DNA of 64,000 bases. Origin: Callorhinchus milii. Its lineage: Eukaryota. A program made the position numbers and the translations under genes. The notes beneath the pieces were generated by a model. It did no database searches. It saw only the letters and a list, made by a program, of their open reading frames with translations, and had not been told where the DNA came from. The stretch is from contig NW_024704751.1 in the NCBI RefSeq assembly GCF_018977255.1, forward strand, positions 8,308,001-8,372,000, in the 5' to 3' direction. Positions within the stretch are counted from its first letter, which is position 1. Each line of letters begins with the position of its first letter. Positions 6,980 through 61,700 of this stretch are shown one piece after another.

Positions 6980-7312
6980 ATGGCTGCTGTGACCGCCAAG
7001 CGAGACGGGCCGCAGTTTATCAGCGAGATGGCAGTGCGAGGCAACGCCGCCGTCCTGGAATATTGTCGGACCTCGGTGTCCGCGCTGTCAGGGGCCACGG
7101 CGGGTATCCTGGGGCTGACGGCCTTGACCGGCTTCGTCTTCTACTTTGTGGCGTCGTTCCTACTCTCCCTGCTGCTGACGGTCAAAGCCGGGCGCCTATG
7201 GAGAAAGTACTTCAAGTCTCGCCGGCCTCTCTTCACCGGCGGACTGGTCGGGGGGCTTTTCACTTACATCCTCTTCTGGACATTCCTCTACGGCATGGTG
7301 CACGTATATTGA
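6980..7312 (+). CDS. EMC6: ER membrane protein complex subunit 6 (110 aa, single coding exon)
   Basis: [47 protein letters not shown]...[27 protein letters not shown]. Acceptor ctccag(cag) at 6955-6963, likely non-coding exon ending at a donor near 5890 (CTG|gtgagt), AATAAA at 7467 and 8440. Confidence 0.98.
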
Positions 7313-11328: not shown

Positions 11329-33018
<21,690 letters not shown>

Positions 33019-43287: not shown

Positions 43288-44245
43288 CGCCGCCGGCTCC
43301 CGCTTCTCCTCTCACATTATCCGGCTCTCTCTCTCCCCCCCACCCATCCCCTCACAGGCCGCGGTGTCGTCTGAGTTCCCTGTCACAGGCTGAGCCGCTG
43401 CCAGCATCAACTGCTACCCCCTCCCTCCCCCCCGCGGCAAGCACCCTGGGATACTGGAGGTCTCCGTGTTGGAGGACTCGAAGCCAGTCATGACACCCCG
43501 CCCCCCGCAGCACCCTGGGATACTGGAGGTCTCCGTGTTGGGAGGACTCTAAGCCAATGATGACAGATAGCCCTCCCCATCCCCCCCCACCCCCAACAAG
43601 AAAAACCCCACCTCCTCCACAAAAAAAACCCCACCCAAAAAAAAACCCTCCCCAAGAGACTCTCCAGAAAGCCCCCCCACCCAAGAGACATTCCCCGCCC
43701 CCCCCAGAGACATCCCCCCCACCCGAGAGACGTCCCCACAACCCGAGAGACGTACCCCACCCCCCCACAGAGACATCCCCCCCCACCCGAGAGACATTCC
43801 CCGCCCCCCCCGAGACATCCCCCCCAACCCGAGAGACGTCCCCACAACCCGAGAGACATTCCCCGCCCCCCCCCCGAGACATCCCCCCCCAACCCGAGAG
43901 ACGTACCCACAACCCGAGAGACGTACCCCGCCCCCCCCAGAGACATCCCCCCCCTGAGAGATATCCCCCAGAAAGCCCACCCAAGAGAGATGTCCCACAG
44001 CAATGCCCCCCCCAGCTACAATCCCCCCCACCCCCCCCGCACACACCCATATACAATATATGCAGGGGGTGGACTCGATTCTATCTTGAAATTCCATTGC
44101 CAAACATGCACCTTGCACTCAGTTCAGCTCCAAAGAAACCCCTTTATATTTTGCCCCCCCCCCCCCCCCACCCACCCGGGAAGATAGTCTCAAGTTGGAC
44201 AATAAGGAGTTGGGCGGGATTTCTGATCAACTTCAGACGATGTGA

Positions 44246-44249
<4 letters not shown>

Positions 44250-44278
<29 letters not shown>

Positions 44279-44415
44279 GCCTTGCATTTGATATAGCGCT
44301 TTTCACACCTTCTCGCCGTCTCGAAGCGCTTCACAAAATAGAGTGTAAAGTGAATTGACTGTATATTTGCGGGCGAAACGCGGCAGCCAATTGCGCACAG
44401 CAGCGTCCCCACAAA
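44250..44415 (-). mobile_element. Representative 3' fragment of the dispersed SINE/LINE tail family
   Basis: Motif GTGAAGCGCTTTGAGACGTCTCGAAGACGTGATAAGGCGCT.TATCAAATGCAAGG(ATT)n. More than 25 fragments in the window, e.g. about 1300-1420, 2400-2520, 4610-4690, 6190-6300, 10540-10640, 15215-15280, 15710-15880, 18100-18220, 18525-18640, 20485-20600, 23430-23600, 32150-32310, 33600-33700, 61980-62110. Confidence 0.85.
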
Positions 44416-44484
44416 CAGTCGTACGCAAACTGTCTCATACAAATACAGCAGTTCGTTCTCAACCTCTTAACTTATTTCCTGGAA

Positions 44485-44666
44485 AAAAAACTTTACGTAA
44501 AGTGGTTGTTTTTTTCCCAACTGAAAAACAGGTTGTACATCGGCTCCCAATTCAGATTAACCATTATTGAAATTCATCACAGTTGTTTGAACAGGCAGAA
44601 GCGACAAACAAGCTCTGGGTAAATACAGAAGGAACATTCCAGAACCTAGAAGAATCCACTGCGGAC
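44485..44666 (+). promoter_or_regulatory. VTN copy A proximal promoter with liver-type sites (paralogous region at about 51680-51860)
   Basis: Conserved between both copies. C/EBP-PAR-bZIP-like TTACGTAA at 44493 (TTGTGTAA in copy B), HNF1-like ATTAACCATTATT at 44556, FOXA-like GTAAATA at 44619 (GTAAACA in B). Motif matches are by eye only. Confidence 0.45.
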
Positions 44667-47600
44667 ATGAGGTGGCTGGCGGTGGTCATTCTCCTCGGCT
44701 CCTTCGTCTGTCCAGCGTCCACCGACCAGGGTAAGGGGAAACGGGCTTACAAGCCATCAGGCTCTACAGCACTTCACTGAGGGACCAGAGAGTTTAAAAG
44801 GGAGACGGCTAGATTCCTGGCAATCATGGGGATAAAGGAGCGTGGGGAAAAGGCCACTCCTCCTGTTCTTATGAGAGAGAGGTGAGTTGAAGACAACTCA
44901 TACTCCAATCTCCCTGCACTCTCCTCTCTCTCTACATCTCTCTGGCTGTCTCCCTCGGTTTGCCATACTTCAGGCAGTGCCTCAGTGTGTTAACCACTGG
45001 CTAGTGTGCAGTTGAGCTGTACGGAATCCAAAAAGTCCCAGAATAACATGGCTGTCTGGGTTGAGTTGGCCAATTCGCCGGAGGTGGCCTGGCGATAGTA
45101 TGGGTATTCCAGTTGACCTCAGGCTCTTGCTCCTGCTGGAGCATGTGTTGCCATTTCAGCCCAACTTCTAGGGATATTAAATACCCCGCTGACAGTCTGG
45201 GCTAACACACAGGTGAGGTGATTGAGGCTGGCAGGAATGGAAGGACTCTGAGGATGTTGCTTTCTGTAATGACGCAGATTTCCACTTGTTTTTGCCTCCT
45301 GTGGCACAGGTTCCTGTGTCGGCCGCTGTGCTGATGGCTTCAACGAGACCCATAAGTGCCAGTGCGACAATCTCTGCCACTTCTACAAGAGCTGCTGTGT
45401 GGATTATAGCACCGTGTGCAGGCGAGGTAAAGAAAGTGGCACAAAGGCAGCATCACTCTCACTCATGGAAATACTGAACACTGCAGAGGGAGCTTTAGAG
45501 TGTCTCTAACCCTGACCTGGGAGTGTGGACGGACAGTGTAGAGGGCGTCTTTACTCTCAAAGCTCCAGCTGCTATGTTGGAGGTATGGCTTGGCCCTTTG
45601 AACTGAGAGGAGATCCCCAGAGTACCGTTTGGTGGTTGGTGGAGTCCTGTAGCTCAGTGGTTAGAGCACTCGCCTTGCAAGCAAGACAACTGGGTTCAAT
45701 TCCAGGCAGGGCGAAACCTTGGGCAAGTTTCCTTACTCTGCACACCTGATAATAATCCCTCCAAAAAAAAACAATAATAGATCGGTCATTTTCAATCCAC
45801 ATCTGTTTGTGGACGCTGCTGTGCGCAATTGGCTTCCATGTTTCGCCCACAAATATACAGTCAATTCTGCATACAGCATATTCTGTGAAGCGCTTTGAGA
45901 CGTCTCGAAGACGTGACAAGGCGCTATATCAAATGCAAGGATTATTATTATTATTTGGTGTAGCTCTGTGTCAGTCACTGCCTGGAGCACTGTGTGAGGA
46001 AGGACTGAGAACTCTTGTTATGCAGGTTCATGTTTTTTTAAAGAAAGAGTGGAAGTGAGGAGAAGCCTAACCATGTGTTTCTCTCCTGATGATTGCTGCC
46101 CCAGCCCACGGCGATGTCTTTACTGTGCCTGAGGATGAACATGACGATGATGACGATGAGTTTGATGATGATATTAATGGGGGAGTTACAGGCTCCAGTC
46201 TTCCATTTGTCTCGTTGAGAAATACAACAGAACCAGAGACAGCAACAGAACTGGCAATGGCTCTGGAACCAGAGACAGCAACAGAACTGGCAATGGCTCT
46301 GGAACCAGAGACAGCAACAGAACTGGCAATGATTCTGGAACCAGAGACAGCAACAGAACTGGCAATGGCTCTGGAACCAGAGACAGCAACAGAACTGACA
46401 ATGATTCTGGAACTAGAGACAGCAACAGAACTGGCAATGACTCCGGAACCAGAGACAGCAACAGAACTGGCAATGGCTCTGGAACCAGAGACAGCAACAG
46501 AACTGGCAATGGCTCTGGAACCAGAGACAGCAACAGAACTGGCAATGATTCTGGAACCAGAGACAGCAACAGAACTGGCAATGGCTCTGGAACCAGAGAC
46601 AGCAACAGAACTGACAATGATTCTGGAACCAGAGACAGCAACAGAACTGGCAATGACTCTGGAACCAGAGACAGCAACAGAACTGGCAATGACTCCGGAA
46701 CCAGAGACAGCAACAGAACTGGCAATGACTCTGGAACCAGAGACAGCAACAGAACTGGCAATGATTCGAGAACCAGAGACAGCAACAGAACTGGCAATGA
46801 CTCTGGAACCAGAGACAGCAACAGAACTGGCAATGGCTCTGAAACCAGGACCGAAACCCAATGATCTGTGTTCCGACAAAGAATCCTTTGATGCCTTCAC
46901 TGACCTAAAAAATGGATCCATCTTTGCTTTCAGAGGTAAGAGCTTTCAGCATTCACACACAGTCACCCTCACATTGTCTCCGCCACACACTCACCCCCGC
47001 ACTCACCCCCACACTGCCTGTCTCTCTCTTCTCAGGGGAATACTTTTATGAACTGGACAGTTACAGCTTTCGCGAAGGATATCCTAAACGCACCAGTGAT
47101 GTCTGGGGCATCCCAGGCCCCATTGATACGGCCTTTACACGGATAAACTGTGAGGGCAAGACGTACATCTTCAAGGTAAATTCTGATCAGCTTCCTTTAT
47201 TCTCTTGCTCCTCGGTGCTGACTGGTGATGGGGTTTGCTCCCGAGCACCACCTCAGCCAGGCGGCCTCTCTCCACGCCTGAGCCAGGAATTGTGTCCACA
47301 AGACATCCAGCTGGCTCCAAGGTGACGTTCCCAGCATGGAATGTCATAATCTGAAGCTGTAAACCACTCCAGCCTTTACAATATAATCATAATAATAATC
47401 CTTACATTTGGAATAGCGCCTTATCAGGTGTGCGAGACATCTCAAAGCACGTCACAGGAATCACTTCGCTTTGTTCTGTATTAAACTGCATCTGCATCTG
47501 CCATCTACCTGCCCATTCTGCAAACCTGTTTGCCTTCCTGTATCTTCTTTGCAATTGTCTTCATCACTCACCACATCCCTGGGGATGTGATTCCAAAATT

Positions 47601-50320
47601 TGTAAATTTCTATATCTGAGTCCAAATCATTTATGTACATGGTGAGGGGGGCAGGAGCAAGAAGTGAGGAAGGGAAAGACAGAGAGAAAGACTCATCCAC
47701 AAACATAAAGTATTAGTTGTTCCTTCCCACCTTCATTTGCAGGTAAGACCTTTTCCATATTGCCCATCGTGGGATAGGTGAGAGAGAGAGACACAGAGAG
47801 TGTGAGTGGTTGAGTGTGAACGAGGAAAGAGAAAGATAGTCTTATTTGCCATTAGTAAATATTTTACTTTCTGCTCTACCCAGGGTGATAGCTACTGGCG
47901 TTTTGACGATGGCAAACTGGATCCAGGATTCCCAAACAAGATCAAGTTAGGTTTTCCCGGCATTCCATCAAACTTGGATGCCTCCTTCGCATTGCCCGCC
48001 TCCAACATTAATGGCAACGAGCGAGCTTACTTCTTCAAAGGTAACCAGCAAATTCCAGCACTGCCCAACGCACATAAACCCTCCACAGAGTCGTCACTCC
48101 TAAGGCTCACGTTATTTTCATCAAAATATTTTTTCTGTAGGAAATCAGTACTGGCAGTACGTTTTCAAACATCAGCCCAAACGGTCAGAGTGCCTGAAAA
48201 CATCGGAGTCTGTGCCCTTCCAGAGATATGCTATAACAATGTTGGACCCGTGGGAAAGTCTTTATGAATTGCTATTTCAAAGCTCTGCATCTGGTGGTAA
48301 TGTTTGTACAAGTAATCTCTTTGTACCTCTCCCCCCAACTCCCCTCTCCCCACCCTCTGTCCTCCACTCCCCTCCCTCCCCAGCCAATCTGCGCTATTAG
48401 AAAAGAGAAGGGAGTTTTGTGATGTCCTCGCTAACAATCCCCCAAATTAATTGGTCATTAGGGTATCAATCTGACTCAGTCAGTAGCACTCTCGCCTCTG
48501 AGTCGGAAGATTGTGGGTTCAAGCCCAAGTCAGGACTTTGAACCCACGTAGTCCAAGCTGACACTGCGATGCAGTGCTGGGGGAGCGCTGAGTTGTTGGA
48601 GGTGCCGTCCTTCGGATGAGAGGTTCAACTGAGAACCCGTCTGCCTGTTCAGGCGGATGTTAAAGATCCCACAAGACCAACAACAAAATGACATTTATAG
48701 AGGACCTTTCACGTCAGGACGACATCCCAAAGTGCTGAAACGGCGCTATGGAGTTATGGTGTTACGGTCTCACAGCGCTATTGGAAAAACAAAGGGAGTT
48801 TCTCTCTCCCGGTGTCCTGTCCGACAATCCCCAAAAATCTAATCCATCAATCACTCCACGGCTGTTTGTGGGACATTGCTGTGTGCAAATTGGCTTCCGC
48901 ATTGGCTCCAAACTACACAGTCACTGCACTTGACAGTGAGTCCTGGAAGTCGCTGTATGAAATGTACGAGTGTTATTGTGAGGCTCGGTGATGACTTTGT
49001 GTTCTAGATGGCGCCATTGGACCAGGCTCTGTCTCCCGGGACTGGCTGGGACTTCCCTCTAATGTGGATGCCGCGATGTCCGGAAAGCTCTTGATGATTT
49101 CACAAGATGTTCCCGATCGACAGAGGGGTAGGAAGAAACCAAAGAAGAGAAAGGGGAAGAAAAAGAAGCATCATTCCTCCAGCATGGAATTTTACTTTCA
49201 CAAGCGTCCTGGATTGGTTCCCAGTCAGAGTATCTACTTCTTTGCTCAAGGTGTCGTCCTGGCGTTTAAACAGAATCATAGAATCATTTAGCTTCACAGC
49301 GCAGAAGGAGGCCATTCGACGCATTGAGTCTCCCAAAGGAAGCTGTTCATCCATCCTCACTGCCCTGCCATCTCATCCGCTTGCATGTCTCTAACTTTCA
49401 TATACCTGTCTACTTCTCTCTGACTCTACATTGGCCACTGTCTCTGCCACCTCACTTGTCAGGAGGTTCCACAACCCAGCAACTCTGTGTGTGAACATAT
49501 TTTCTCTAAACTCTCCTTTTGCTCGCCTTGTGATTATCTTATATTCGTGTCCTCCAGTTACTGATTGCCTGACCAGTGGAAGCAGCTTCTGCCCATTTTG
49601 CTTCTCTGGTCCAATGACAACAGACCCAACTTCTCCAGTCTCTCCTCCTACTGTAACCCCTCAGTCTTGGATTGATTCTCATAACCTCCTCTGCACCCCC
49701 GCCAAGGCTTCAGCGTCTTTCCTGAAGTCAGGCTCTGCCACTAAGTGTGGGTGTGTGTCTCTCTTTCTTTCTCTTCCTAGCAGTCTGTGTGTGTATCTCT
49801 CTCTGTGTCTCTTTCAACTACTTTAACAGTCTGTGTGTGTCTCTCATTCTCTCGGACAGTCTGTGTGTGTCTCTCATTCTCTCGGACAGTCTGTGTGTGT
49901 CTCTCATTCTCTCGGACAGTCTGTGTGTGTCTCTCATTCTCTCGGACAGTCTGTGTGTGTCTCTCATTCTCTCGGACAGTCTGTGTGTGTCTCTCATTCT
50001 CTCGGACAGTCTGTGTGTGTCTCTCATTCTCTCGGACAGTCTGTGTGTGTCTCTCATTCTCTCGGACAGTCTGTGTGTGTCTCTCATTCTCTCGGACAGT
50101 CTGTGTGTGTCTCTCATTCTCTCGGACGGTCTGTGTGTGTCTCTCATTCTCTCGGACAGTCTGTGTGTGTCTCTCAGCTGCAGGGGGCCTGACTAACCCT
50201 TTTCTCGTTACAGACGAGTATTACCGCGTGGACCTGGAGTCCAAGCAAGTGGCGCTCGTGGACCCGCCGTACCCCCGGTCCATCGCCAGATACTGGTTCA
50301 AGTGCCGCGAGTCGGAGTGA
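44667..50320 (+). CDS. VTN: Vitronectin-like, copy A (HGD instead of RGD, 17 x 12-aa repeat insert), about 604 aa
   Basis: Exons 44667-44730 (signal peptide), 45310-45426 (somatomedin-B SCVGRC...CQCDNLCHFYKSCCVDY), 46105-46935, 47036-47175, 47884-48040, 48141-48296, 49008-49250, 50214-50320. Hemopexin repeats (FDAFTDLKNGSIFAFRG, DVWGIPGPIDTAFTRINCEGKTYIFKG), a basic heparin-binding stretch and C-terminal YPRSIARYWFKC. AATAAA at about 50443. Confidence 0.93.
45641..45955 (+). mobile_element. Full-length tRNA-derived SINE (same family), only in VTN copy A intron 2
   Basis: Pol III A box (TAGCTCAGTGG) and B box (GGTTCAATTCC), (ATT)n tail, candidate TSD TTGGTG. Absent at the equivalent position in copy B (about 52930). 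Confidence 0.9.
46230..46841 (+). repeat. Coding 36-bp minisatellite, 17 units (EPETATELAM[A/I/T]L)
   Basis: GAACCAGAGACAGCAACAGAACTGGCAATGGCTCTG x17 = 612 bp, in frame within exon 3 of VTN copy A. Confidence 0.97.
48468..48965 (+). mobile_element. Deu-domain-like SINE with a nested reverse tail fragment (paralogous copy 55835-56340)
   Basis: tRNA-like head (TCAGTCAGTAGCACTCTCGCCTCTGAGTC..GGTTCAAGCCC), then GGAGGTGCCGTCCTTCGGATGAG...GTTAAAGATCCCAC...GGGAGTT..CCCGGTGTCCTG resembling the DeuSINE central domain from memory. Related fragments at about 3300-3620 (-), 15298-15410, 33720-33960 and 38260-38400. Confidence 0.65.
49826..50176. repeat. 30-bp intronic minisatellite (CAGTCTGTGTGTGTCTCTCATTCTCTCGGA), VTN-A intron 7
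   Basis: About 11.5 near-perfect tandem units directly upstream of the branch point GACTAAC at 50191. Confidence 0.95.
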
Positions 50321-51860
50321 GACCCGGACTGACCTGATATCTGCATCAACTGTGGCCAAGACACACACTGTGAACCCTATTGGAGAGGAGGACCTCCGGC
50401 CGACCACAGCTCACACACGTACCCGAGTCCTCCACAGCAACCAATAAACACACAAAGTCAACCTGAGTGGTTCTGTGTCTCTCTCTCTCTGTTAGGAACT
50501 GTGCTGTCCTGAAGCCGGGGTTACTTTCCAAGATAATTAAAAACACACGCAGTCACCACACTTTACAGTCTATTTCGTGAAGCGCTTTGAAGCGTCCCGA
50601 AGGTACGATAAGGTGCTGTATCAAATGCGGGGATTATTATTATTAGCTAGTTTACTCCTGTTTTGTAAAGCCCCCACCCCCAACCCCACCCCCTCGCACA
50701 CACACATTGACAAGTTTTGTAAATCCACTTCCTTTATCTCCCCCATAACAATACCTGTAACTAACAGCGCATCATGGAGCCAGTCAGGTTGTTTAGGAAA
50801 TTCTGAGCGAAAAACACAGTAAAACACACATCCGCTGGTTGTCAAGGCATCGGTTGGTGCTACTTTGCCTTTTTAACCAGGTTCATCCACAAAACAACGT
50901 GCATTAATGTCGCATTGAAATGCTGAGGCTTATAATCCGGGTAAACATATCCGTGTGGTCACACTTTTGGATGTGACGTAGCAGTCGGCTTCACTATTCC
51001 ACTAGTGAGCTACGCAGGATGAATCAGGTTCATGTTCTTGCTCATCATCTTGTGACTCCTGGCGCGCGGTGCATTTATGTGGCCTCCAGGTCAGTACAGG
51101 ATCAGCCTCCAAGGTCCTCGTTCATGGTCAAACAGCCCCTCACACTCACTAACCACGCTCTCGTATGAAGAACGGCCGCTTAGTTGAAGTGCTGTCAACA
51201 ACTGGCGATTTGAACGCCAGCACAAGTCTTTAGGAGAGATTGGTGGGCGTGTGTGTGGGTGGGGGGGGGGGAGGGGGGGAGACAAGGTGAAAGACATTGC
51301 TCAGAGCTCATTCCTCTAACACTGGGGATCGTCCTCGTTGCTCTCCTCTGCACCAAATCCACTAAATAAAATTGGTCGCTCACTTCATGACTGTTTGTGG
51401 CGCATTACTGTATGCAAACTGGCTCCTGGGTTTTGCCCACCAAACACACAGTCAATCCACTTTACTGTATATCTTGTAAAGAGCTTGCGGACATCTCAAC
51501 GAGGTAATAAGATGCTATATAATTGTTATTACTATTAACATCATAATAATATTACTATAATGCTGTGAAGCACTTTGAGATGTTCTCCCAACCTGAAAAG
51601 CGCTGTATCAAATGCAAGGATTATCGTACAAATAATACAGCAGTTGGTTCTCGATTACTGTTACTTATTTCGGGGAAACAACCTTGTGTAAAATGTTTGC
51701 TTTTATTTCCCCAGCAGAAAAACAGATTGTACATCGGCTCCCAACTCAGATTAACCATTATTGAAAATCAACACAGTTGTTTGAACAGGCAGAACAGGCA
51801 AACAAGCTCTGGGTAAACACAGAAGGAACATTCCAGAACCCATAGGAATCGACTGCGGAC

Positions 51861-54800
51861 ATGAGGTGGCTGGCGGTGGTCATTCTCCTCGGCTCCTTCG
51901 TCTGCCCAGCGTCCACCGACCAGGGTAAGGGGGAAACGGGCTTACAATCCATCAGGCTCTACAGCACTTCACTGAGGGACCATCGCGGTGTTGAAAAGGC
52001 TGACGGCTAGATTCCCGGGACGTCATGGGGATAAAGGAGCGTGGGGTAAAGGCAGGGAAATAGTTTCAAAAGATGTGCCAGGGTCTGATTAACTGGTGGA
52101 ACAGGATTGACGGACTGAATGGCCTCCTCCTGCTCCTATGAGAGAGTTGAAGGCAACTCAAACCCGAATCTCCCGTGCACTCTCCTTCTCTCTCGCTCCC
52201 CGTCTCTCTCTGGGGCTGCTCATATTTGCCCCGGGTTTGCCGTTACTTGTGTTTCAGGCAGTGCCTCAATGTGCTAACCACTGGTTAGTGCGCAGTTGAG
52301 CTGATCCCCAGAATCCAAAAGGTCCCAGGGTAACATGGCTGTCTGGGCTGAATTTGCTGATTACAGCGGGGAGGATAGTGTGGGTGTTACGGTTGACTTT
52401 GGTGCCCTTGAGCACTTGCTCCTGCTGGATAGTGCATGTGTGGTCATTTCAGCCCAACTTCTAGGGATATTAAATACCCCGCTGACAGTCTAGGCTAACA
52501 CACAGAGGAGTGAGGTGATTGAGGCTGGCAGGAACTCTGAGGATGTTGCTTTCTGTAATGACGCAGATTTCCACTTGTTTTTGCCTCCTGTGGCACAGGT
52601 TCCTGTGTCGGCCGCTGTGCTGATGGCTTCAACGATACCCATAAGTGCCAGTGCGACAATCTCTGCCACTTCTACAAGAGCTGCTGTGTGGATTATAGCA
52701 CCGTGTGCAGGCGAGGTAAAGAAAGTGGCACAAAGGCAGCATCACTCTCACTCATGGAAATACTGAACACAGTGTAGAGGGAGCTTTAGAGTGTCTCTAA
52801 CCCACTGTCACTGACCTGGGAGCGTGGACGCACGGTGTAGAGGGAGCTTCACTCTCAAAGCTCCAACTGGTATGTCGGAGGCGTGGCTTGTCCCGTTAAA
52901 TTGAGAGGAGATCCCCAGAGTGCCCTTTTGCTGGTGTAGCTCTGTGTCAGTCACTGCCTGGAGCACTGTGTGAGGAAGGACACTGAGAACTCTTGTTATG
53001 AAGGTTCATATTTTTTTAAAGAAAGAGTAGAAGTGAGGAGAAGCCTAACCATGTGTTTCTCTCCTGGTGATTGCTGCCCCAGCCCGCGGCGATGTCTTTA
53101 CTGTGCCTGAGGATGACGAAGAGTTTGATGTTGACATTATTGGGGGAGTTACAGGCTCCAGTCTTCCATCTGCCGCTTCAACAACAGCCTTGTTGAGAAC
53201 GACAACGGTACCAGAGACAGCAACAGAACCGGCAACGACGACTCTGGAACCAGAACCCAAACCCAATGACCTGTGTTCCGACAAAGAATCCTTTGATGCC
53301 TTCACTGACCTAAAAAATGGATCCATATTTGCTTTCAGAGGTAAGAGCATTCAGCATTCACACACATACACACAGACGTGCACTTTTCCAGCAGGTGTCA
53401 TCTGATAGCGAACGGCAGCAGGAGCCTTGACTGGTCTGACCTCTTCCCATCCGGGGACACTGAGGACTATTGTTGTACTGCACTTCAGGCTCCAGCATAA
53501 TGGTGTCTGTCTCCCAGGGCGCGCACACATTGATCTCAATAGCTGTCGCTTGTGCCATTAATTACACTTACAAGGCTGTTATCTGATGGTTTATCACCTG
53601 TGTTAGAATTCCTGTCCCACCCCTTGCTGGTTCCCCTGTCTGTCTGAGGTTCTGAACTCACTGGGCCCCGGCATACTTTGCTGCACGTGCCAAGCTACGG
53701 TAACATCCAAATCCCACGTTTCGTCACCACACCGTCTCCCCCACACTGTCTATTCCCAGTCCATGCATCATTCCCCCTGCCTTACCTCATTCAAAGAGCG
53801 TCTCAAGACCTTCCTCTTTGACCGTGCGTTCGACCACCCTCCTACGCCCATCCTCCCTGCCCTCCAGCCCCCCACACCCTGATCCCAATCCTCGGCTCGG
53901 GTCAAAATCCCTGACTGTCCAGCATCTTGGGACATCCTCCCGACGTGAAAAGCGCTTTACAAATGTAGTTTGTTGCTGTTGTTGTCTCCCCCACACACTC
54001 GCCCCCACACACTCACCCCCGCACTCACCCCCACTGCCTGTCTCTCTCTTCACAGGAGACTACTTTTATGAACTGGACAGTTACAGCTTTCGCGAAGGAT
54101 ATCCTAAACGCATCAGTGATGTCTGGGGCATCCCAGGCCCCATTGATACGGCCTTTACACGTTTAAACTGTGAGGGCAAGACGTACATCTTCAAGGTAAA
54201 CTCTGGTCGGCTCCCTTTATTCTCTTGCTCCTCGGTGCTGACTGGTGACGGGGTTTGCTCCCCAGCACCACCTCAGCCGGGCGGCCTCTCTCCATGCCTG
54301 AGCCAGGAATTGTGTCCACAAGACATCCAGCTGGCTCCAAGGTGACGTTCCCAGCATGGAATATCATAATCTGAAGCTGTAAACCACTCCAGCCTTTACA
54401 ATATAATCATAATAATAATCCTTACATTTGGAATAGCGCCTTATCAGGTCTGCGAGACATCTCAAAGCGCCTCGCAGGATATACTGCAATGCGGAGTGAC
54501 TTTGTTTTGTATTTCCTGCTAGTTGTAATCACTCAGCCTCTGGTAACATCTTGGTAAATCCACACTGCACTCTCTCTCCATTGCCACAACCTCCTCCCTG
54601 CAGTAAGGTGACCAGAACTGCACACGGCATCTCCATGTGGTCTGAACAAGGTTTTATACAAATTGAACATTACTTCCCCACTTTTATACTGTGATCCTCT
54701 CAACATTAAGCCCGGTTCTCTGTTTGCACTATTTATGGCCTTGACCACCTTTGTTACTAATTTTAGAGACTTTATTCAGCTGAATCTCTTAAGTTCTTAG

Positions 54801-57435
54801 CATCTAAGATAAAATGGCTTCTTTATTGCTCCCACCAAAGTCAATCACTTCGCTTTGTTCTGTATTAAACTGCATCTGCCATCTCCCTGCCCATTCTGCA
54901 AACCTGTTTGCCTTCCTGTATCTTCTTTGCAATCGTCTTCATCACTCACCACATCCCTGGGGGTGTGATTCCAAAATTTGTAAATTTCTATATCTGAGTC
55001 CAAATCATTTATGTACATGGTGAGGGGGGCAGGAGCAAGAAGTGAGGAAGGGAAAGACAGAGAGAAAGACTCATCCACAAACATAAAGTATTAGTTGTTC
55101 CTTCCCACCTTCATTTGCAGGTAAGACCTTTTCCATATTGCCCATAGGTGAGAGAGAGAGACACAGAGAGTGTGAGTGGTTGAGTGTGAACGAGGAAAGA
55201 GAAAGAGTCTTATTTGCCACTAGTAAATATTTTACTTTCTGCTCTACCCAGGGTGATAGCTACTGGCGTTTTGACGATGGCAAACTGGATCCCAGATACC
55301 CAAGAAAGATCAAGAGAGGTTTTCCCGGCATTCCGTCAAACTTGGATGCCTCCTTCGCATTGCCCGCCTCCAACATTAATGGCAACGAGCGAGCTTACTT
55401 CTTCAAAGGTAAACAACAAATTCCAGCACTGCCCAATGCACATAAACCCTCCACAGAGTCGTCACTCCTAATGCTCACGTTATTTTCATCAAAATATTTT
55501 TTCTGTAGGAAATCAGTACTGGCAGTACGTTTTTGAAAATCAGCCCAAACGGTCAGAGTGCCTGAAAACATCGGAGTCTGTGCCCTTCCAGAGATATGCT
55601 ATAACAATGTTGGACCCGTGGGAAAGTCTTTTTGAAGTGCTATTTCAAAGCTCTGTATCTGGTGGTAATGTTTGTACGAGCAATCTCTTTGTACCTCTCC
55701 CCCCAACTCCCCTCTCCCCACCCTCTGTCCTCCACTCCCCTCCCTCCCCAGCCAATCTGTGCTATTAGAAACGAGAAGGGAGTTTTGTGATGTCCTCGCT
55801 AACAATCCCCCAAATTAATTGGTCATTAGGGTATCAACCTGACTCAGTCAGTAGCACTCTCGCCTCTGAGTCGGACTATTGTGGGTTCAAGCCCAAAGTC
55901 AGGACTTTGAACCCACGTAGTCCAAGCTGACACTGCGATGCAGTGCTGGGGGAGCGCTGAGTTGTTGGAGGTGCCGTCCTTCGGATTAAAGGTTCAACTG
56001 AGAACCCATCTGCCTGTTCAGGCGGATGTTAAAGATCCCACAAGAACAACAGCAAAATGACATTTATAGAGGACCTTTCACGTCGGGACGACATCCCAAA
56101 GCGCTGAAACGGTGCTATGGAGTTACGGTGTTACGGTCCCACAGCGCTATTTGAAAAACAAAGGGAGTTTCTCTCTCCCGGTGTCCTGTCCGACAATCCC
56201 TTAAAAATCCAATCCATCAATCACTCCACGGCTGTTTGTGGGACATTGCTGTGTGCAAATTGGCTTCCGCATTGGCTCCAAACTACACAGTCACTGCACT
56301 TGACAGTGAGTCCTGGAAGTCGCTGTATGAAATGTAAGAGTATTATTGTGAGGGTCGATGATGACTTTGTGTTCTAGATGGCGCCATTGGACCAGGCTCT
56401 GTCTCCCGGGACTGGCTGGGACTTCCCTCTCATGTGGACGCCGCGATGACCGGAAAGCTCTTGATGATTCGACAAGATGTTCTCATCCGACAGAGGGGTA
56501 GGAACAAACCAAAGAGCAGAAGGTGGAAGAAAAAGAAGCATCATTCCTCCAGCATGGAATTTGACTTCTACATGCCTCCTGGATTGGTTCCCAGTCAGAG
56601 TGTCTACTTCTTTGCTCAAGGTATCGTCCTGGCGTTTAAACCAGAATCATTCACATCCATCGAGACTCTCAAAGCAAGCTGTTCATCCAACCCCACCGCC
56701 CTGCCCTATCCCCACTCCCTCCTCGCCGGTCTCCCCAGGTCCACCACGGAGGTCAGGCTTTCAGCCATTACACCTCAAAACTTTGGAACACTCTCCCTCA
56801 ATCCCTCCGCCTTGCCCCCTCTCTCCCCTTTTTCAAGTCCCGCCTGAAAACCTTACTTTTCGACCGTGTTTACGGTCACCCAGACCCAGCCCCCCCACCC
56901 CCCTCCGGCTTGGAGTCAGGCTCCGCTAGCGCATGTCTCTCAGGTCCAATGCTCTGGGACACTATCCTGCGTCTGTGTGTGCATCTTTCATTCTCTCTGA
57001 CAGTCTGTGTGTATCTTTCATTCTCTCTGACAGTCTGTGTGTGTATCTTTCATTCTCTCTGACAGTCTGTGTGTATCTTTCATTCTCTCGGACAGTCTGT
57101 GTGTGTCTCTCATTCTCTCGGACAGTCTGTGTGTGTCTCTCATTCTCTCGGACAGTCTGTGTGTGTCTCTCATTCTCTCGGACAGTCTGTGTGTGTCTCT
57201 CATTCTCTCGGACAGTCTGTGTGTGTCTCTCATTCTCTCGGACAGTCTGTGTGTGTCTCTCATTCTCTCGGACAGTCTGTGTGTGTCTCTCAGCTGCAGG
57301 GGCCTGACTAACCCTTTTCTCGTTACAGACGAGTATTACCGCGTGGACCTGGAGTCCAAGCAAGTGGCGCTCGTGGACCCGCCGTACCCCCGGTCCATCG
57401 CCAGATACTGGTTCAAGTGCCGCGAGTCGGAGTGA
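51861..57435 (+). CDS. VTN: Vitronectin, copy B (canonical RGD), about 413 aa
   Basis: Exons 51861-51924, 52599-52715, 53083-53340 (begins A-R-G-D-V-F-T-V-P-E-D), 54056-54195, 55252-55408, 55509-55664, 56378-56620, 57329-57435. Same architecture as copy A and an intact frame. Confidence 0.95.
54500..55020 (-). mobile_element. Degenerate CR1-like LINE fragment in VTN-B intron 4 (shorter version 47460-47640 in copy A)
   Basis: Reverse translation has CR1 ORF2-like pieces (YINDLDSDIE, YKSGEVMFNLYKTLFRPH). Other CR1-like 3' fragments at about 30325-30510, 49270-49740 and 51960-52140. Confidence 0.7.
56970..57292. repeat. Same 30-bp minisatellite, VTN-B intron 7
   Basis: About 11 units, the 5' ones more diverged (TATCTTTCATTCTCTCTGA). 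Confidence 0.95.
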
Positions 57436-58035
57436 GACCCGGACTGACCTGATATCTGCATCAACTGTGGCCAAGACACACACTGTGAACCCTATTGGAG
57501 AGGAGGACCTCCGGCCGACCACAGCTCACACACGTACCCGAGTCCTCCACAGCAACCAATAAACACACAAAGTCAACCTGAGTGCTTCTGCCTCTCTCTC
57601 TCTCTCTCTCTCTCTCTGTGAGGAACTGTGCTGTCCTGAAGCCGGGGTTACTTTCCAAGACAACTAAAAACACACGCAGTCACCACACTTTACAGTCTAT
57701 TCCGTGAAGCGCTTTGAGGCGTCCCGAAGGCGCGATGAGGCCCTGTGTATCGCAGGCCATGGGGTGTAAATGCTAATAGCGGGAAATAATTATTAATTAA
57801 TTAAGAATAACTTGGGTGGTCGGGAAGGTCCTGCCTCCGGGCAGCGGCTGCGGTGGGGGACTGCAGGCGGGGACAGGAGCCGGAGATGGGAGGGTGGGGG
57901 GTGCGCAGAGCAGAGACACCCAGAGGGGAGGGAGAGAGGGTGAGAGGCGATGCTGCATTGTGGATGATGTAATGCTTTGTGCAGAGGCGCTGTGGATGCT
58001 CCAGTGCAGTCTCCTGTGTTGGTTGCAGTGAGACA

Positions 58036-58067
<32 letters not shown>

Positions 58068-58265
58068 CAGAGACAGAGAGAGAGGGAGACAGAGAGAGAC
58101 AGAGACAGAGAGAGAGAGAGAAGTTGATGTTCTTGTCCTGTGCCTTAAAGCATCTGATGTGACTGCACTGAGACAGACAGAGCAAAAGAGGGAGAGAGAG
58201 AGAGAGAGGGAGGAAGCAGTTGGATGTTCCTGTGCTGTGATGTAAAGCCCTCTGTCTTCTCGCAG

Positions 58266-58451
58266 NNNNNNNNNNNNNNNNNNNNNNNNNNNNNNNNNNN
58301 NNNNNNNNNNNNNNNNNNNNNNNNNNNNNNNNNNNNNNNNNNNNNNNNNNNNNNNNNNNNNNNNNNNNNNNNNNNNNNNNNNNNNNNNNNNNNNNNNNNN
58401 NNNNNNNNNNNNNNNNNNNNNNNNNNNNNNNNNNNNNNNNNNNNNNNNNNN
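58266..58451. other. Assembly gap (186 N)
   Basis: N run immediately upstream of SARM1 exon 1. There is also a single N at 4531. Confidence 1.
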
Positions 58452-58704
58452 GGAAGGAGGGAGAGGAAGGGAAGGAGGGAGAGGAAGGGAAGGAGGGAGA
58501 GGAAGGGGAGGAGGGAGAGGAAAGGGAAGGAGGGAGAGGAAGGGAAGGAGGGAGAGGAAGGGGAAGGAGGGAGAGGAAGGGAAGGAGGGAGAGGAAGGGG
58601 AAGGAGGGAGAGGAAGGGGAAGGAGGGAGAGGAAGGGGAAGGAGGGAGAGGAAGGGGAAGGAGGGAGAGGAAGGGGAGGCAGCAGTTGGATGTTCCTGTA
58701 GCGC

Positions 58705-61700
58705 ATGTCTCTCAGGTCCAAACTGCTCTGGTTTCTCGCCATGTTGGGCTCAGAGCAGCATCTCTCAATGCCGGGGTCCAGCCCCAACCCCTCCAACCCC
58801 ATCCCTCCAACCCCAACCCCCCCAACCCCTCCAACCCCATCCCCTCCAACCCCAACCCCCCCAGCCCCATCCCCCCAACCCCATCCCCCCCAGCCCCCGC
58901 CCCCGCCCCCCCAGCCCCAACGAGGAGGCGATGGCAGCCACGCAGCGCCTCTCAGCGCCTCTCCGACGCGCTCTGAGCGCCCTCCGAGCGGCCCGCGGCT
59001 CCGGGGAGGAGCAGCAGCGGCTGATGGCCGAGATCCAGGGGCTGGTGCTGGAGGGGTGGGGTCTGGCGGCCCTGGGCCGGGGGGTGGCCGCCGCTCTCTG
59101 CGACCTCATCCGTCTGGAGGGAGGTCTGGACCGTCTCCTGGAGCTGCTCAGGTCCCCGACCGCGGAGATCAGGTACCGGGCGGCCAGACTGCTGGAGCAG
59201 GTACTGGTCACCGAGAACAGGTGAGGGGGGGGGGGGGGGGAGGGGGAGGGGGAGATGGGGGTGGGGTGGGGGTAGATGGGGTGGGGGTGGGGGAGATGGG
59301 GGTTGGGGTGGGGGGAGATGGGGGTTGGGGTGGGGGAGATGGGGGTTGGGGTGGGGGAGATGGGGTTGGGGTGGGGGAGATGGGGGTTGGGGTGGGGGAG
59401 ATGGGGGTTGGGGTGGGGGAGATGGGGGTGGGGGTGGGGGGAGATGGGGGTGGGGGTGGGGGAGATGGGGGTGGGGGTGGGGGAGATGGGGGTGGGGTGG
59501 GGGGAGATGGGGGTGGGGGTGGGGGGAGATGGGGGTGGGGGTGGGGGGAGATGGGGTGGGGTGGGGGGAGATGGGGGTTGGGGTGGGGGAGATGGGGGTT
59601 GGGGTGGGGGAGATGGGGGTTGGGGTGGGGGAGATGGGGGTTGGGGTGGGGGAGATGGGGGTTGGGGTGGGGGAGATGGGGGTGGGGTGGGGGGAGATGG
59701 GGGTGGGGGTGGGGGGGAGATGGGGTGGGGGTGGGGGGAGATGGGGGGGGTGGGGGGAGATGGGGGTTGGGGTGGGGGAGATGGGGGTGGGGGTGGGGGG
59801 AGATGGGGTGGGGGGAGATGGGGGTGGGGGGAGATGGGGTTGGGTGGGGGGAGATGGTTGGGGGGCACTTGGAGACGTCTCGAAGACGTGATTTGGGCGC
59901 CGGGTCAAACACAAGGATTATTATTGTTATTGTTATTAGCCGTCAGTTTTCTCCCCTTTCGTAACCCCCACCTCATTCCACCCCCCCACCCCCACCCCCC
60001 ACACCCCCACAGCCCACCCCCCCCCCCACCCCCCCACCCCCCGCACACACACATTGACGAGTTTAGTAAAATCTCTTCCTTTATTTCCCCAACAACAATA
60101 TCTATAACTGAGAGAGGCCATTGCGAAACCCGGTTATTTGAGGAAATTCTGAGCGACACATACAGTAAAAACCACATCCTCTGACGTGTGAAGGCATCGG
60201 TTAGCGCCGCTTTGCCTTCGAATCCGGTTCAACAACAAAGCAATAACATGCATTCTTTCCAAGGGGTGGGGGAGAGATGGGGGGGCGAGGGGGGGGGGGT
60301 AATGTTTCTGAGCGCGGGGGCTTCATTGTCATTGGTGTTTGTGTTAATCAGAGGGGCCTCGTAATGTCAGGTGCCAGTGACAGTGTTGAGAGGGGGTGGG
60401 GGAGGGGGGAAGGTGTTGGGGTTGGTGTGGGTGGGGTGACTGGGGTGGGGGTTAGGGGGCAGTCAGGTGGTGGTGGCGGGTTGGCTGCCGGGGTCTAGTT
60501 GTGCCGATGGGCTCTCTGTGACTGGCGTCTCTCCCACAGGGACCGTGTGGCTCGCACGGGCTGGGCTTGATCCTGGAGCTGGTGAGGGAGCGCGAGGACG
60601 TGCCGATGGCCAGGGTCATGTCCGGGATCCTGCAGCACATGTTCAAGCACTCGGAGGAGACCTCGTACCTGCTGATCGCCAACGGCGGGCTGGACGCCAT
60701 CCTATACTGGTGCCGGGGCACGGACTCAGCCCTGCTGCGGCACTGTGCCATGGCCCTGGCCAACTGTGCCATGCACGCCGGCCACAAGAACCAGCGGCTC
60801 ATGATCGAGAAGAACGCAGCGAATTGGCTGTTCCCACTGGCCTTCTCCAGCGACCAGCTGGTCAGGTTCCATGCCTGCCTGGCCATCACCGTGCTAGCCA
60901 CCAACAGGGAGATCGAGAAGGAGGTGGAGGGGTCGGGGACCCTGGACCTGGTGGAGCCCTTCATCGCCTCGCTTCACCCCGAGGAGTTTGCGCGGAGCTG
61001 GCTCGACAGCGGGGAGAACTCGCAGGGACGCACACCCGAGGACCTGCAGAGGCTGGTGCTCCTGCTGGACAGCCCACGACTGGAGGCTCAATGCATCGCG
61101 GCCTTCTACCTGTGTGTGGAGGCCGGCATCAAGTGCGAGCAACACAAAACCCAGGTGAGGGCTGAGAGAGAGAGAGAGAGAGAGGGCAGGGCTGGTCCCA
61201 GGTCATGGGTAAGAGACTCCCTCTCTACGCTGTCCGTCCACACTCCCAGGTCCGTGACAGGACAGGTTAGTCTCTGTGTAAAAGTGGAGTTGATGATCGT
61301 TAAGTAAGGTGAGGGTTTGCTGAGTGACACGAGACTTGGGGTTTGAGGGACAAGGTCAGGACAGACACCAGGAAGTACTTCTTTACACCGAGGTGAAGTA
61401 ACAGCTGGAATACGTGACCAAGAGTGGGGACTGAGGTCGGCTCGGTGTTGTCTGGGGTGTGGGGGTGGGCATACAGACCCGACGGGTCACCATCTCTCTC
61501 CTCTCTCTCTCCCTCGTTGCAGATATTCTATGAAATCGGAGCAGTTCAGAGCCTCAAGCGGATCGTGAGCTATTCCCGGAACGTCACCACCTCGGCACTC
61601 GCCAAGAAGAGCCTGAAGATGATGGGGGAGGCCATTCCTCGCCGGCTCTCCCCGGCCGTGCCCAACTGGAAACCCTGCGAGGTGCAGACCTGGCTCCAGC

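What the first reader, a model, noticed from the sequence alone, without database searches (positions are those of the whole stretch)
44667..57435. Tandem vitronectin pair: one canonical, one apparently neofunctionalised (no RGD, long acidic repeat stalk)
Seen: two complete 8-exon VTN genes with intact frames, splice sites, promoters and polyA signals. Copy B reads A-R-G-D after the SMB domain. Copy A reads A-H-G-D, has an expanded acidic tract (EDEHDDDDDEFDDD vs EDDEEFDVD) and a 204-aa insert of 17 x EPETATELAMxL between SMB and the hemopexin propeller. Established: RGD is the integrin-binding site of vitronectin, SMB binds PAI-1/uPAR, and the hemopexin/basic region binds heparin, complement C5b-9 and calcium phosphate. 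Inference: copy A is a secreted, integrin-blind, strongly acidic protein with a likely O-glycosylated spacer. It could be a decoy, a complement or plasminogen regulator, or a mineral-binding matrix protein. The mineral role would matter if this is a cartilaginous fish, a group reported to lack SCPP mineralisation genes.
Basis: partly seen in the sequence, partly recalled or inferred. Interest (0 to 1): 0.85.

Follow-up and report, generated by a model that had tools for sequence, protein, structure and literature searches.

The report
Vitronectin gene pair, one lacking RGD
The elephant shark has two side-by-side vitronectin genes; the longer one, already listed in databases as 'vitronectin-like', is transcribed, has lost the RGD cell-adhesion motif and carries a long acidic repeat, and its function is untested.

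Summary
Two intact 8-exon vitronectin genes lie in tandem: A at 44667-50320 (604 aa) and B at 51861-57435 (413 aa). All 14 introns are GT-AG. A reads HGD where B reads RGD, a single CGC>CAC change. A also has a 15-nt acidic insertion and 17 in-frame 36-nt units (EPETATELAMxL).

The genome is Callorhinchus milii. Both genes are already public: A is XP_007894721.1 'vitronectin-like' and B is NP_001279188.1 'vitronectin precursor'. My four paper searches on this gene or its linker found no discussion of A.

The copies differ by 5-13% in DNA, so this is not a haplotype artefact. A-specific spliced RNA contigs occur in three runs from two studies. One carries the HGD codon and the acidic insertion without any difference.

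Ten of ten elasmobranch vitronectins inspected keep RGD, and nine of them have acidic Pro-rich tandem repeats in the linker. The stalk is therefore a chondrichthyan habit, not a mark of new function. The unusual feature is the RGD loss (0 of 111 other vitronectins examined have another xGD).

AlphaFold predicts helices for the repeat rather than a mucin-like coil. The repeat contains no Ser, so it offers no S-x-E sites, and nothing supports a mineral role. Function remains inferred.

The parts
44667..44730 (+). Copy A exon 1 (start codon, signal-peptide-like MRWLAVVILLGSFVCPASTDQ)
   Evidence: The peptide is identical to exon 1 of B and is found verbatim in XP_007894721.1.
45310..45426 (+). 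Copy A exon 2, somatomedin B domain
   Evidence: Pfam PF01033, E 6e-12. One nucleotide difference from B, at 45347.
46105..46935 (+). Copy A exon 3 (831 nt): HGD, acidic tract, 17-unit repeat, start of the hemopexin region
   Evidence: Spliced RNA contigs: X3 record 19 joins exon 2 to 46103-46236 with 0 differences, and X5 record 27 joins 46866-46933 to 47034-47173.
46107..46109 (+). CAC (His) codon in place of the Arg of RGD. B has CGC at 53085-53087.
   Evidence: Unchanged in X3 record 19 and X1 record 2.
46230..46841 (+). In-frame coding minisatellite, 17 units of 36 nt (EPETATELAMxL)
   Evidence: TRF and unit table: 7 distinct DNA units give 7 distinct peptides, with no synonymous variant. 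Units 1-5 recur as units 7-11. RNA contigs lie inside it: X2 records 10 and 11, X3 record 21, X5 records 25 and 26.
47036..47175 (+). Copy A exon 4 (hemopexin)
   Evidence: PF00045, E 1.4e-7
47884..48040 (+). Copy A exon 5 (hemopexin)
   Evidence: PF00045, E 7.7e-8
48141..48296 (+). Copy A exon 6. An alternative donor 9 nt further (48305) gives isoform X1 (GGNVY).
   Evidence: P0003 and P0152 compared. X2 record 14 (A-type, 0 differences) joins 48295 to 49007.
49008..49250 (+). Copy A exon 7, basic (heparin-binding type) cluster RQRGRKKPKKRKGKKKK
   Evidence: 13 of 17 residues K/R. It has 20 differences from B in 243 nt, 17 replacement and 3 silent. A-type RNA contigs: X3 record 22 (0 differences) and X2 record 16.
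50214..50320 (+). Copy A exon 8 (hemopexin, stop TGA)
   Evidence: Identical to exon 8 of B, as are the next 140 nt.
50443..50448 (+). AATAAA after copy A
51861..57435 (+). Copy B, canonical vitronectin (8 exons: 51861-51924, 52599-52715, 53083-53340, 54056-54195, 55252-55408, 55509-55664, 56378-56620, 57329-57435), RGD at 53085-53093
   Evidence: It equals NP_001279188.1/K4FT09 except for one residue in exon 3, where the window has P and the cDNA has L.
57558..57563 (+). AATAAA after copy B

Best explanation
This is a tandem duplication of the vitronectin gene in Callorhinchus milii, dating from after the chimaera lineage split from sharks and rays. Both copies are transcribed.

Copy B is the ordinary adhesive vitronectin. 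Copy A is the RefSeq 'vitronectin-like' gene. A keeps the signal peptide, the somatomedin B domain, the hemopexin repeats and the basic cluster.

A has changed in three ways:
- It lost the integrin motif through one CpG transition (CGC to CAC, RGD to HGD).
- It gained five acidic or His residues in the acidic tract.
- Its linker expanded by a very young in-frame 36-nt minisatellite built from the ancestral linker segment (B: VPETATE[L/P]ATTTLEPE).

Inferred mechanism: A is secreted together with B. It can still engage somatomedin-B ligands (PAI-1 type) and polyanions or complement through its propeller and basic cluster. It cannot anchor cells through alpha-v integrins. It would therefore act as a non-adhesive, more acidic, longer vitronectin that competes with or buffers B.

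Shown: gene structure, identity, transcription, splicing, the HGD codon and the repeat.
Inferred: secretion, ligand binding, loss of integrin binding, and any physiological role.
For: Structure and domains.

Identity: all 8 exon peptides of A occur verbatim in XP_007894721.1.

Lineage-specific duplication: A and B are each other's nearest relatives. The hemopexin half of A is 81% identical to a B-type model. The next hit is a shark vitronectin at 54%. 510 hits reached E<=1e-10, of which 120 were listed.

Not an artefact: the copies are 86.8-95.3% identical in DNA, the introns have different lengths, and both proteins are recorded on one 22.4-Mb public contig.

Expression:
- X3 record 19 has 25 nt of exon 2 joined to 46103-46236 with 0 differences. 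It spans the HGD codon and the A-only 15-nt insertion.
- X3 record 22 is A-type exon 7 with 0 differences.
- X2 record 14 is the A-type end of exon 6 joined to exon 7.
- X2 record 16 is A-type exon 7, depth 4944.
- X2 records 10 and 11 lie inside the repeat.
- X5 records 26 and 27 run from the repeat end through the end of exon 3 into exon 4.
- X2 has zero depth in the intron 1 bins, so it behaves as RNA.

RGD is otherwise near-universal: of 118 non-Callorhinchus vitronectins, 111 had a recognisable end of the SMB domain. Of those, 107 read RGD, 4 had no xGD (models without the start of exon 3), and 0 had another xGD.

The retained parts look constrained:
- The SMB domain differs by 1 residue.
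- Exon 8 is identical.
- The basic cluster holds 13 of 17 K/R in A and 11 of 17 in B.

Exon 7 has more replacement change (17 per 187.7 sites) than the flanking introns 5 and 6 (28 of 811 sites), Fisher p 0.0026. All 7 polarised exon 7 changes lie on A's lineage, 7 against 0, p 0.016. This argues against plain decay.
Against: - No function was tested.
- Across exons other than exon 3, pN/pS between the copies is 1.08 (32 replacement, 8 silent). That is what relaxed constraint gives.
- A has changed at positions invariant in 10 outgroups: I357T, F478Y, D551Y and V564I.
- The repeat is so young that selection on it cannot be read. There are no synonymous differences among units.
- The excess in exon 7 could instead mean that gene conversion homogenised the introns and stopped short of exon 7. 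Identity runs from about 87% at the 5' end to 100% in exon 8 and the 3'UTR. Alignment of the K/R-rich stretch to outgroups is weak.
- Contig depths cannot rank A against B, and the tissues are unknown to me.
- Whether HGD truly fails to bind integrins was not tested here. I found no paper on HGD as an integrin motif (2 papers, both irrelevant).
- No A-specific contig shows the exon 1-exon 2 junction.
Confidence: 0.55

Rival explanations
1. Copy A is a redundant young duplicate drifting under relaxed constraint. It is still transcribed because it inherited the promoter. The RGD loss, the acidic insertion and the minisatellite expansion would be neutral or slightly harmful accidents with no new role.
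For: - pN/pS is 1.08 over seven exons.
- A has 14 derived changes against 8 for B, several at invariant positions.
- The R>H change is an ordinary CpG transition.
- The repeat units are near-identical and form a higher-order duplication, typical of an unstable minisatellite.
- Linker repeats come and go in every chondrichthyan lineage examined.
Against: - The frame is intact through 1815 nt, including 612 nt of repeat.
- All splice sites are intact and used.
- 14 against 8 is not significant, p 0.29.
- Exon 7 replacement divergence exceeds the intron divergence, p 0.0026, which drift alone does not give.
- A's basic cluster became more basic, not less.
Confidence: 0.3
2. Copy A is still an adhesive vitronectin. 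HGD, or another site, still engages an integrin or a uPAR-like receptor. On this view the pair differs mainly in linker length, as the long and short vitronectin genes of the skate Leucoraja do.
For: - Leucoraja erinacea has a 536-aa long-linker and a 430-aa short-linker vitronectin-like protein recorded on one contig, both with RGD. A long and short pair can therefore exist without loss of adhesion.
- The SMB domain of A is intact.
Against: The Arg of RGD is conserved in 107 of the 111 vitronectins examined, and the other 4 are models without that exon part. From recall, not read here: mutating the RGD of human vitronectin abolishes cell adhesion. A paper with that title phrase is cited in 13 papers (listing only).
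Confidence: 0.1
3. Copy A is an acidic mineral-binding or mineral-inhibiting matrix protein that stands in for the SCPP genes that cartilaginous fishes lack.
For: Only its charge: 104 D+E against 52 K+R in the mature protein, pI 4.47. I did not check it.
Against: - The repeat has no Ser, so it offers no S-x-E phosphorylation sites. A as a whole has one S-x-E, shared with B.
- Equally acidic linkers occur in RGD-bearing vitronectins of sharks and rays.
- A-type and B-type contigs both reach high depth in the same run X2.
- No skeletal expression data were available to me.
Confidence: 0.03
4. The pair is an assembly artefact, that is, two haplotypes of one gene placed in tandem.
For: UniProt/Ensembl models of this species mix A and B exons. 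One DNA contig of run X1 carries all 8 B-type letters of exon 5 inside A-type flanks. Assemblers therefore do confuse the copies.
Against: - DNA divergence is 5-13%, with large intron length differences.
- Distinct A-type and B-type transcripts occur in one run: X2 records 9 and 13 are B-type, and records 14, 16, 10 and 11 are A-type.
- RefSeq lists both as separate genes on one contig, and B has its own cDNA.
Confidence: 0.02

Closest known systems
Vertebrate vitronectin (VTN), e.g. NP_001279188.1 of C. milii (copy B) and the elasmobranch vitronectins P0161-P0224
   Same: - The exon count and intron phases match copy B.
- The layout is signal peptide, somatomedin B domain, acidic tract, linker, hemopexin repeats and basic cluster.
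- The hemopexin half is 81% identical to a B-type model and 54% to shark vitronectin.
- It lies next to a gene with two SAM domains, noted by the scan as SARM1.
   Different: - HGD in place of RGD.
- The linker is 261 aa, against 70 in B and 83-164 in ten elasmobranch proteins.
- The repeat unit is richer in Leu, Ala and Met and poorer in Pro than the elasmobranch units.
Teleost vitronectin a / vitronectin b pair
   Same: Two vitronectin genes in one genome. PMC6337849 (section 8 read) reports an extra a/b copy in teleosts.
   Different: - The teleost proteins listed that had a recognisable SMB end keep RGD.
- That paper reports an extra copy only for teleosts and does not mention a second C. 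milii gene.
- The C. milii pair is tandem and far younger. The teleost proteins are each roughly 33-54% identical to A.
Proteoglycan 4 / lubricin (PRG4). Comparison from recall, not tested here.
   Same: The overall layout is somatomedin B domain(s), then a long tandem-repeat stalk, then a C-terminal hemopexin-like domain, with no adhesive RGD role. Copy A has arrived at a similar layout from a vitronectin start.
   Different: Lubricin's stalk is a Pro/Thr-rich, heavily O-glycosylated mucin domain many times longer. A's repeat is 20% Thr, 9% Pro and 25% Glu, and is predicted helical. A is a recent vitronectin copy, not a PRG4 orthologue.
Coding minisatellites (VNTR) in secreted proteins
   Same: A 36-nt unit, 17 near-identical copies, a higher-order 6-unit duplication, in frame.
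   Different: Length polymorphism, the defining behaviour of a VNTR, could not be tested. The only full-length read-outs (the window and the RefSeq protein) show the same 17 units in the same order and may derive from the same assembly.

Membership tests
Vitronectin | N-terminal somatomedin B domain with its eight cysteines | tested here: met
   Pfam PF01033, E 6e-12, 46.1 bits against a cut-off of 23.1, on exon 2 of A. One residue differs from B.
Vitronectin | RGD integrin motif directly after the somatomedin B domain | tested here: not met
   A reads HGD (CAC) and B reads RGD (CGC). 107 of 111 other vitronectins examined read RGD.
Vitronectin | Hemopexin-type repeats forming the C-terminal propeller | tested here: met
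   PF00045 on exons 4 (1.4e-7), 5 (7.7e-8) and 8 (9e-4, below the cut-off on its own). Full-length public proteins of both copies carry PF00045.
Vitronectin | Basic (heparin-binding type) cluster in the penultimate exon | tested here: met
   13 of 17 residues are K/R in A and 11 of 17 in B. Heparin binding itself was not tested.
Vitronectin | Orthology or paralogy by sequence and position | tested here: met
   The nearest relative is copy B in tandem. The next nearest are elasmobranch vitronectins at 54%. A BLTP2-family exon lies upstream and SAM-domain exons lie downstream. That this matches the human neighbourhood is recalled.
Mucin-like O-glycosylated spacer | Tandem repeats dominated by Pro, Thr and Ser, intrinsically extended | tested here: inconclusive
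   The repeat has T 41, P 18 and S 0 of 204 residues, against E 51, A 39, L 32 and M 17. AlphaFold2 on the single sequence gives one helix per unit at pLDDT about 67-82, pTM 0.42. Glycosylation cannot be tested with these tools.
Acidic secretory calcium-binding phosphoproteins (SCPP/SIBLING type) | Many S-x-E phosphorylation sites in an acidic disordered protein; membership of the SCPP gene cluster | tested here: not met
   There is one S-x-E in all of A, shared with B, and none in the repeat, which has no Ser. The gene is a vitronectin copy at the vitronectin locus.
MgtE_N helical domain (Pfam PF03448) | Homology to the N-terminal domain of Mg2+ transporter MgtE | tested here: not met
   The Pfam hit (E 3.9e-8, 34.2 bits, 3 stretches) falls wholly on the repeat. 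Foldseek matches to MgtE chains have TM 0.24-0.28 over 119-136 columns, among many generic helical repeat proteins. I read this as a repeat look-alike.

The most novel reading that the evidence does not exclude
Copy A is an adaptively diverged vitronectin that no longer binds integrins. A de novo minisatellite has built a structured, helical, highly acidic stalk between the somatomedin B head and the hemopexin propeller. Its heparin-binding exon has been reshaped by selection. The result would be a lubricin-like or anti-adhesive plasma or matrix protein invented in chimaeras. That would be a datable example of a new domain born from a coding VNTR.
Probability: 0.15. Interest if true: 0.6.

Novelty: new variant of a known kind. 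Interest (0 to 1): 0.35.

Why it matters
Vitronectin's RGD is close to invariant across jawed vertebrates: 107 of the 111 proteins examined have it, and the rest are truncated models. An expressed natural copy without RGD, with every other module kept, could serve as a natural separation-of-function variant. It could show what vitronectin does apart from integrin adhesion (PAI-1 and complement control, polyanion binding).

The locus also shows that the linker of cartilaginous-fish vitronectins is a hot spot where different acidic tandem repeats arise again and again. Here a 204-aa segment was built so recently that its units still lack silent differences.

The practical value is modest. The gene is already annotated, the duplication is young and confined to one lineage, and no function is shown.

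Tried and rejected
1. The Pfam MgtE_N hit on the repeat and the Foldseek search of the AlphaFold model (best E 1.3e-5 to designed helical repeat proteins, TM at most 0.32). I rejected both as homology. They are generic helical-repeat resemblance.

2. HMMER of the exon 3 peptide against 1.84 billion representatives gave 196 hits at E<=0.001, with 150 listed. Only P0003 and P0001 are vitronectins. I read two of the others, P0004 and P0005. Both are unrelated long proteins with their own 12-residue tandem repeats. I did not inspect the remaining 146. Close relatives (over 50% identity) hide behind one representative, so this search cannot show other chimaera orthologues.

3. Word-index search with the same peptide gave 2 hits: P0001 and a plant phosphatase, which I dismissed.

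4. Gene conversion as a live polymorphism. The X1 contig has 8 of 8 B-type letters in exon 5 inside A-type flanks. X5 record 27 has two B-type letters in exon 4. The Ensembl models are mosaics. Contig builders can merge paralogues at shared words, so I do not claim it. The identity gradient and the identical exon 8 and 3'UTR are still best read as past conversion.

5. The joints for introns 2 and 5 in run X2. The intron 5 joint (record 13) is B-type, and the intron 2 joint in X2 cannot be assigned to either copy. I count only the contigs named in the report as A-specific.

6. Dating the duplication. The collections searched returned no other holocephalan vitronectin: nothing lay between 81% and 54% identity. 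No date is given.

7. Papers. Searches found nothing on a second C. milii vitronectin or on chondrichthyan linker repeats. For PMC6337849 I read passages and section 8. Its Additional file 1, Figure S4 (the vitronectin tree) could not be seen and might show the paralogue. One search (HGD motif) gave 2 irrelevant papers. One search was a listing only.

Exon peptides were searched one by one by window reference. Full-length work used the public proteins P0152 and P0156 by id.

Full report
WHAT IS THERE. A blastn comparison of 44000-51200 with 51201-58200 gives collinear blocks offset by about 7.2 kb. Identity rises from 86.8-88.2% at the 5' end to about 95% in the 3' half. Reading frames and splice sites give two complete genes on the + strand. 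Each has eight exons with the same phases, and all 14 introns are GT..AG. Copy A (44667-50320) has a 1815-nt coding sequence (604 aa). Copy B (51861-57435) has 1242 nt (413 aa). An AATAAA follows each stop codon by about 120 nt. Searched exon by exon, Pfam finds a somatomedin B domain in exon 2 (E 6e-12) and hemopexin repeats in exons 4, 5 and 8.

- A reads A-HGD-VF and B reads A-RGD-VF. The codons are CAC and CGC, one transition at a CpG.
- A has a 15-nt insertion in the acidic tract.
- Exon 3 of A holds 17 in-frame 36-nt units at 46230-46841. TRF reports period 36, 17.2 copies, 94% matches and no indels.

The units fall into 7 DNA variants that encode 7 different peptides. There is no silent variant, and units 1-5 recur as units 7-11. 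The array is therefore very young. Its unit resembles the single linker segment of B, VPETATE(P/L)ATTTLEPE, so it grew out of the native linker.

WHOSE GENOME, AND IS IT KNOWN. The exon 3 peptide of A hits a Callorhinchus milii vitronectin. In a full HMMER scan it hits a 607-aa protein at 100% identity. Cluster look-up names them:
- A is XP_007894721.1 'vitronectin-like' (604 aa), with isoform X1 XP_007894720.1 (607 aa, an alternative exon 6 donor 9 nt downstream).
- B is NP_001279188.1 / K4FT09 / AFK11268.1 'vitronectin precursor' (413 aa).

All eight exon peptides of my A model, and seven of eight for B, occur verbatim in these proteins. The eighth B peptide differs by one residue. The gene models are therefore already public.

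Several UniProt/Ensembl models of the species mix A and B exons or read into intron 7. I take these for model or assembly artefacts.

In print I found nothing on the second gene. Four searches gave no paper. PMC6337849 (passages and section 8 read) says cartilaginous fishes have a vitronectin with an integrin-binding region and reports an extra copy only in teleosts. Its supplementary tree could not be opened.

IS THE PAIR REAL AND IS A EXPRESSED. The copies differ by 5-13% in DNA and their introns differ in length. Both proteins are recorded on one 22.4-Mb public contig.

I laid the contigs of four public runs of the same organism on 44600-50400 at 98% likeness. Run X1 (2025) covers introns at depth of about 10, so it behaves as DNA. 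Runs X2 and X3 (2013, one study) and X5 (2022, another study) behave as RNA. X2 has zero depth in intron 1 and has spliced joints.

A-specific pieces, judged against the list of A/B differences:
- X3 record 19 has 25 nt of exon 2 joined to 46103-46236 with no difference. It spans the HGD codon and the A-only insertion.
- X3 record 22 covers exon 7 (49031-49184) with no difference, across 14 A/B differences.
- X2 record 14 is the A-type end of exon 6 joined to exon 7.
- X2 record 16 is A-type exon 7, depth 4944.
- X2 records 10 and 11, X3 record 21 and X5 record 25 lie inside the repeat.
- X5 records 26 and 27 run from the last unit through the end of exon 3 into exon 4.

Against over-reading:
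- X2 records 9 and 13 (exon 2, and the exon 5-6 joint) are B-type.
- The X2 joint over intron 2 cannot be assigned.
- X2 shows no contig over the end of exon 3 and exon 4. The tool warns that such holes prove nothing.
- No A-specific contig shows the exon 1-2 joint.
- Contig depth cannot rank genes.

X1 record 2 (45956-46268) differs from the window at 46023 and 46238 but not at the His codon. HGD therefore stands in at least two haplotypes and in data of three studies. Fixation is not shown. The count of 17 units has no independent support.

HOW UNUSUAL IS IT. I searched with the hemopexin half of the public A protein (510 hits at E<=1e-10, 120 listed). After the two Callorhinchus clusters the next hit is a shark vitronectin at 54% identity. 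The duplication therefore happened on the chimaera side after the split from sharks and rays. No other holocephalan protein was returned, so I cannot date it more closely.

Of the 118 listed proteins from other species, 111 have a recognisable end of the somatomedin B domain. 107 of these read RGD within 14 residues. Four have no xGD and look like models lacking the start of exon 3. None has another xGD. The RGD loss is thus the exceptional feature.

The stalk is not exceptional:
- All ten elasmobranch vitronectins measured keep RGD and have acidic linkers of 83-164 aa with 22-59 D+E. Nine of the ten have pI 4.3-5.3 and one has 6.48.
- Nine of ten elasmobranch linkers scanned carry tandem repeats with lineage-specific units of 8 to 22 residues. 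Some reach only about 1.3 to 2 units.
- A's linker is the longest (261 aa, 67 D+E, pI 4.47).
- B's linker is short and non-repetitive (70 aa, pI 6.07).
- The skate Leucoraja erinacea also has a long-linker and a short-linker gene product recorded on one contig, both with RGD.

WHAT THE REPEAT MIGHT BE. It is 25% Glu, 20% Thr, 19% Ala, 16% Leu, 9% Pro and 8% Met, with no Ser. AlphaFold2 on the single exon 3 peptide predicts a helix of about 10 residues in each unit at pLDDT about 67-82 (pTM 0.42). The flanks fall below pLDDT 50. Pfam's MgtE_N hit and the Foldseek matches (TM at most 0.32) are generic helical-repeat resemblance. Single-sequence predictions on perfect repeats can be over-regular, so a helical stalk is a lead, not a result. 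It does weaken the 'mucin-like spacer' reading.

SELECTION OR DRIFT. Counts were made per exon on in-phase codons without joining. Exons other than exon 3 show 32 replacement and 8 silent differences, pN/pS 1.08. I polarised against nine elasmobranchs and the coelacanth. Of 43 A/B differences, 14 are A-derived, 8 are B-derived and 21 are unresolved (14 against 8 gives p 0.29).

- It has 20 differences in 243 nt against 28 in 811 nt of introns 5 and 6 (p 0.004).
- Replacement sites alone give 17 per 187.7 (p 0.0026).
- All seven polarised changes are on A's side (p 0.016).

This fits adaptive change in A. It also fits gene conversion that homogenised the 3' introns, exon 8 and the 3'UTR (100% identical over exon 8 plus 140 nt) but not exon 7. 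Several polarised sites lie in a K/R-rich stretch that aligns poorly.

MOST LIKELY MECHANISM. A keeps every module except the integrin motif and is transcribed with correct splicing. I therefore read it as a secreted vitronectin variant that can still bind somatomedin-B ligands and polyanions but cannot attach cells through alpha-v integrins. It would be a non-adhesive, longer, more acidic partner or competitor of B (confidence 0.55; only the anatomy and expression are shown). The main rival is a redundant copy drifting under relaxed constraint (0.3). Other rivals:
- A is still adhesive (0.1).
- A has a mineral-binding role (0.03). It has no S-x-E sites beyond one shared with B, equally acidic linkers occur in ordinary shark vitronectins, and it appears co-expressed with B.
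- The pair is an assembly artefact (0.02).

SURROUNDINGS. Upstream on the - strand lies a large exon of the Hobbit/BLTP2 family (23661-24857, E 1e-65). On the + strand there is an EMC6-type ORF (6974-7312), and on the - strand a kinase exon (36297-36650). Downstream on the + strand are exons with two SAM domains, which the scan's note s1-904554 calls SARM1. That this matches the vitronectin neighbourhood of other vertebrates is my recollection.

VERDICT. The interpretation overrates the stalk and has no support for the mineral idea. The expressed RGD-less paralogue is real and, as far as my searches reach, undiscussed. It is a new variant of a known kind, of moderate interest.

Noticed in passing
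window 45376-45957 (intron 2 of copy A): This stretch reaches contig depths of 10^4-10^5 in all four runs laid and has many joints to other places. It behaves as a high-copy interspersed repeat. It is absent from intron 2 of B (678 nt in A against 367 in B), and part of it matches B's intron 4 in reverse (45849-45955 against 54510-54405, 81%).
   Followed up: partly
window 49826-50176 and 56971-57292 (intron 7 of A and B): A 30-nt minisatellite lies in both copies: 11.7 copies at 99% in A and 10.6 copies at 95% in B. The first 320-520 nt of intron 7 do not align between the copies.
   Followed up: no
window 50214-50460 and 57329-57575: Exon 8 and at least 140 nt of the 3'UTR are 100% identical between the copies, while the 5' end is only about 87% identical. 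The gradient suggests gene conversion in the 3' part.
   Followed up: partly
window 47925-47967 (exon 5 of A): A DNA contig of run X1 (47616-48355) carries all 8 B-type letters of exon 5 inside A-type flanks. This is either a converted allele or a contig merged across the paralogues. It is unresolved.
   Followed up: partly
window 48297-48305 and 55665-55673: An alternative donor 9 nt downstream of exon 6 adds GNV and changes the junction residue, giving ...SGGNVYGA.... It is seen in RefSeq isoform X1 of A (P0003) and in a UniProt entry for B (V9KX97, P0159).
   Followed up: partly
window 53231 region (exon 3 of B): The window encodes VPETATEPATTTL, where the cDNA protein K4FT09 has VPETATELATTTL. 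This is a Pro/Leu polymorphism in the segment from which A's repeat unit derives. The Leu form is the closer match to the unit.
   Followed up: partly
public proteins P0172 and P0245 (Leucoraja erinacea): The little skate has a long-linker (536 aa, six 16-residue units, flagged low quality) and a short-linker (430 aa) vitronectin-like protein recorded on one contig, both with RGD. This parallels the long and short pair seen here.
   Followed up: partly
window 23661-24857 (-), 6974-7312 (+), 36297-36650 (-): Neighbouring coding pieces: a Hobbit/BLTP2-family exon (E 1e-65), an EMC6-type ORF (E 4e-23) and a protein-kinase fragment (E 3e-5, below Pfam's cut-off).
   Followed up: partly
window 42866-43189, 43672-43969, 58452-58679, 59236-59814: Dense simple and minisatellite repeats (GT-rich, C-rich 20/106-nt units, GGAAGGAGGGAGAGGAAG, GGGGGTGGGGGTGGGGGAGAT) flank the vitronectin pair on both sides. 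The N run at 58266-58451 was left untouched.
   Followed up: no
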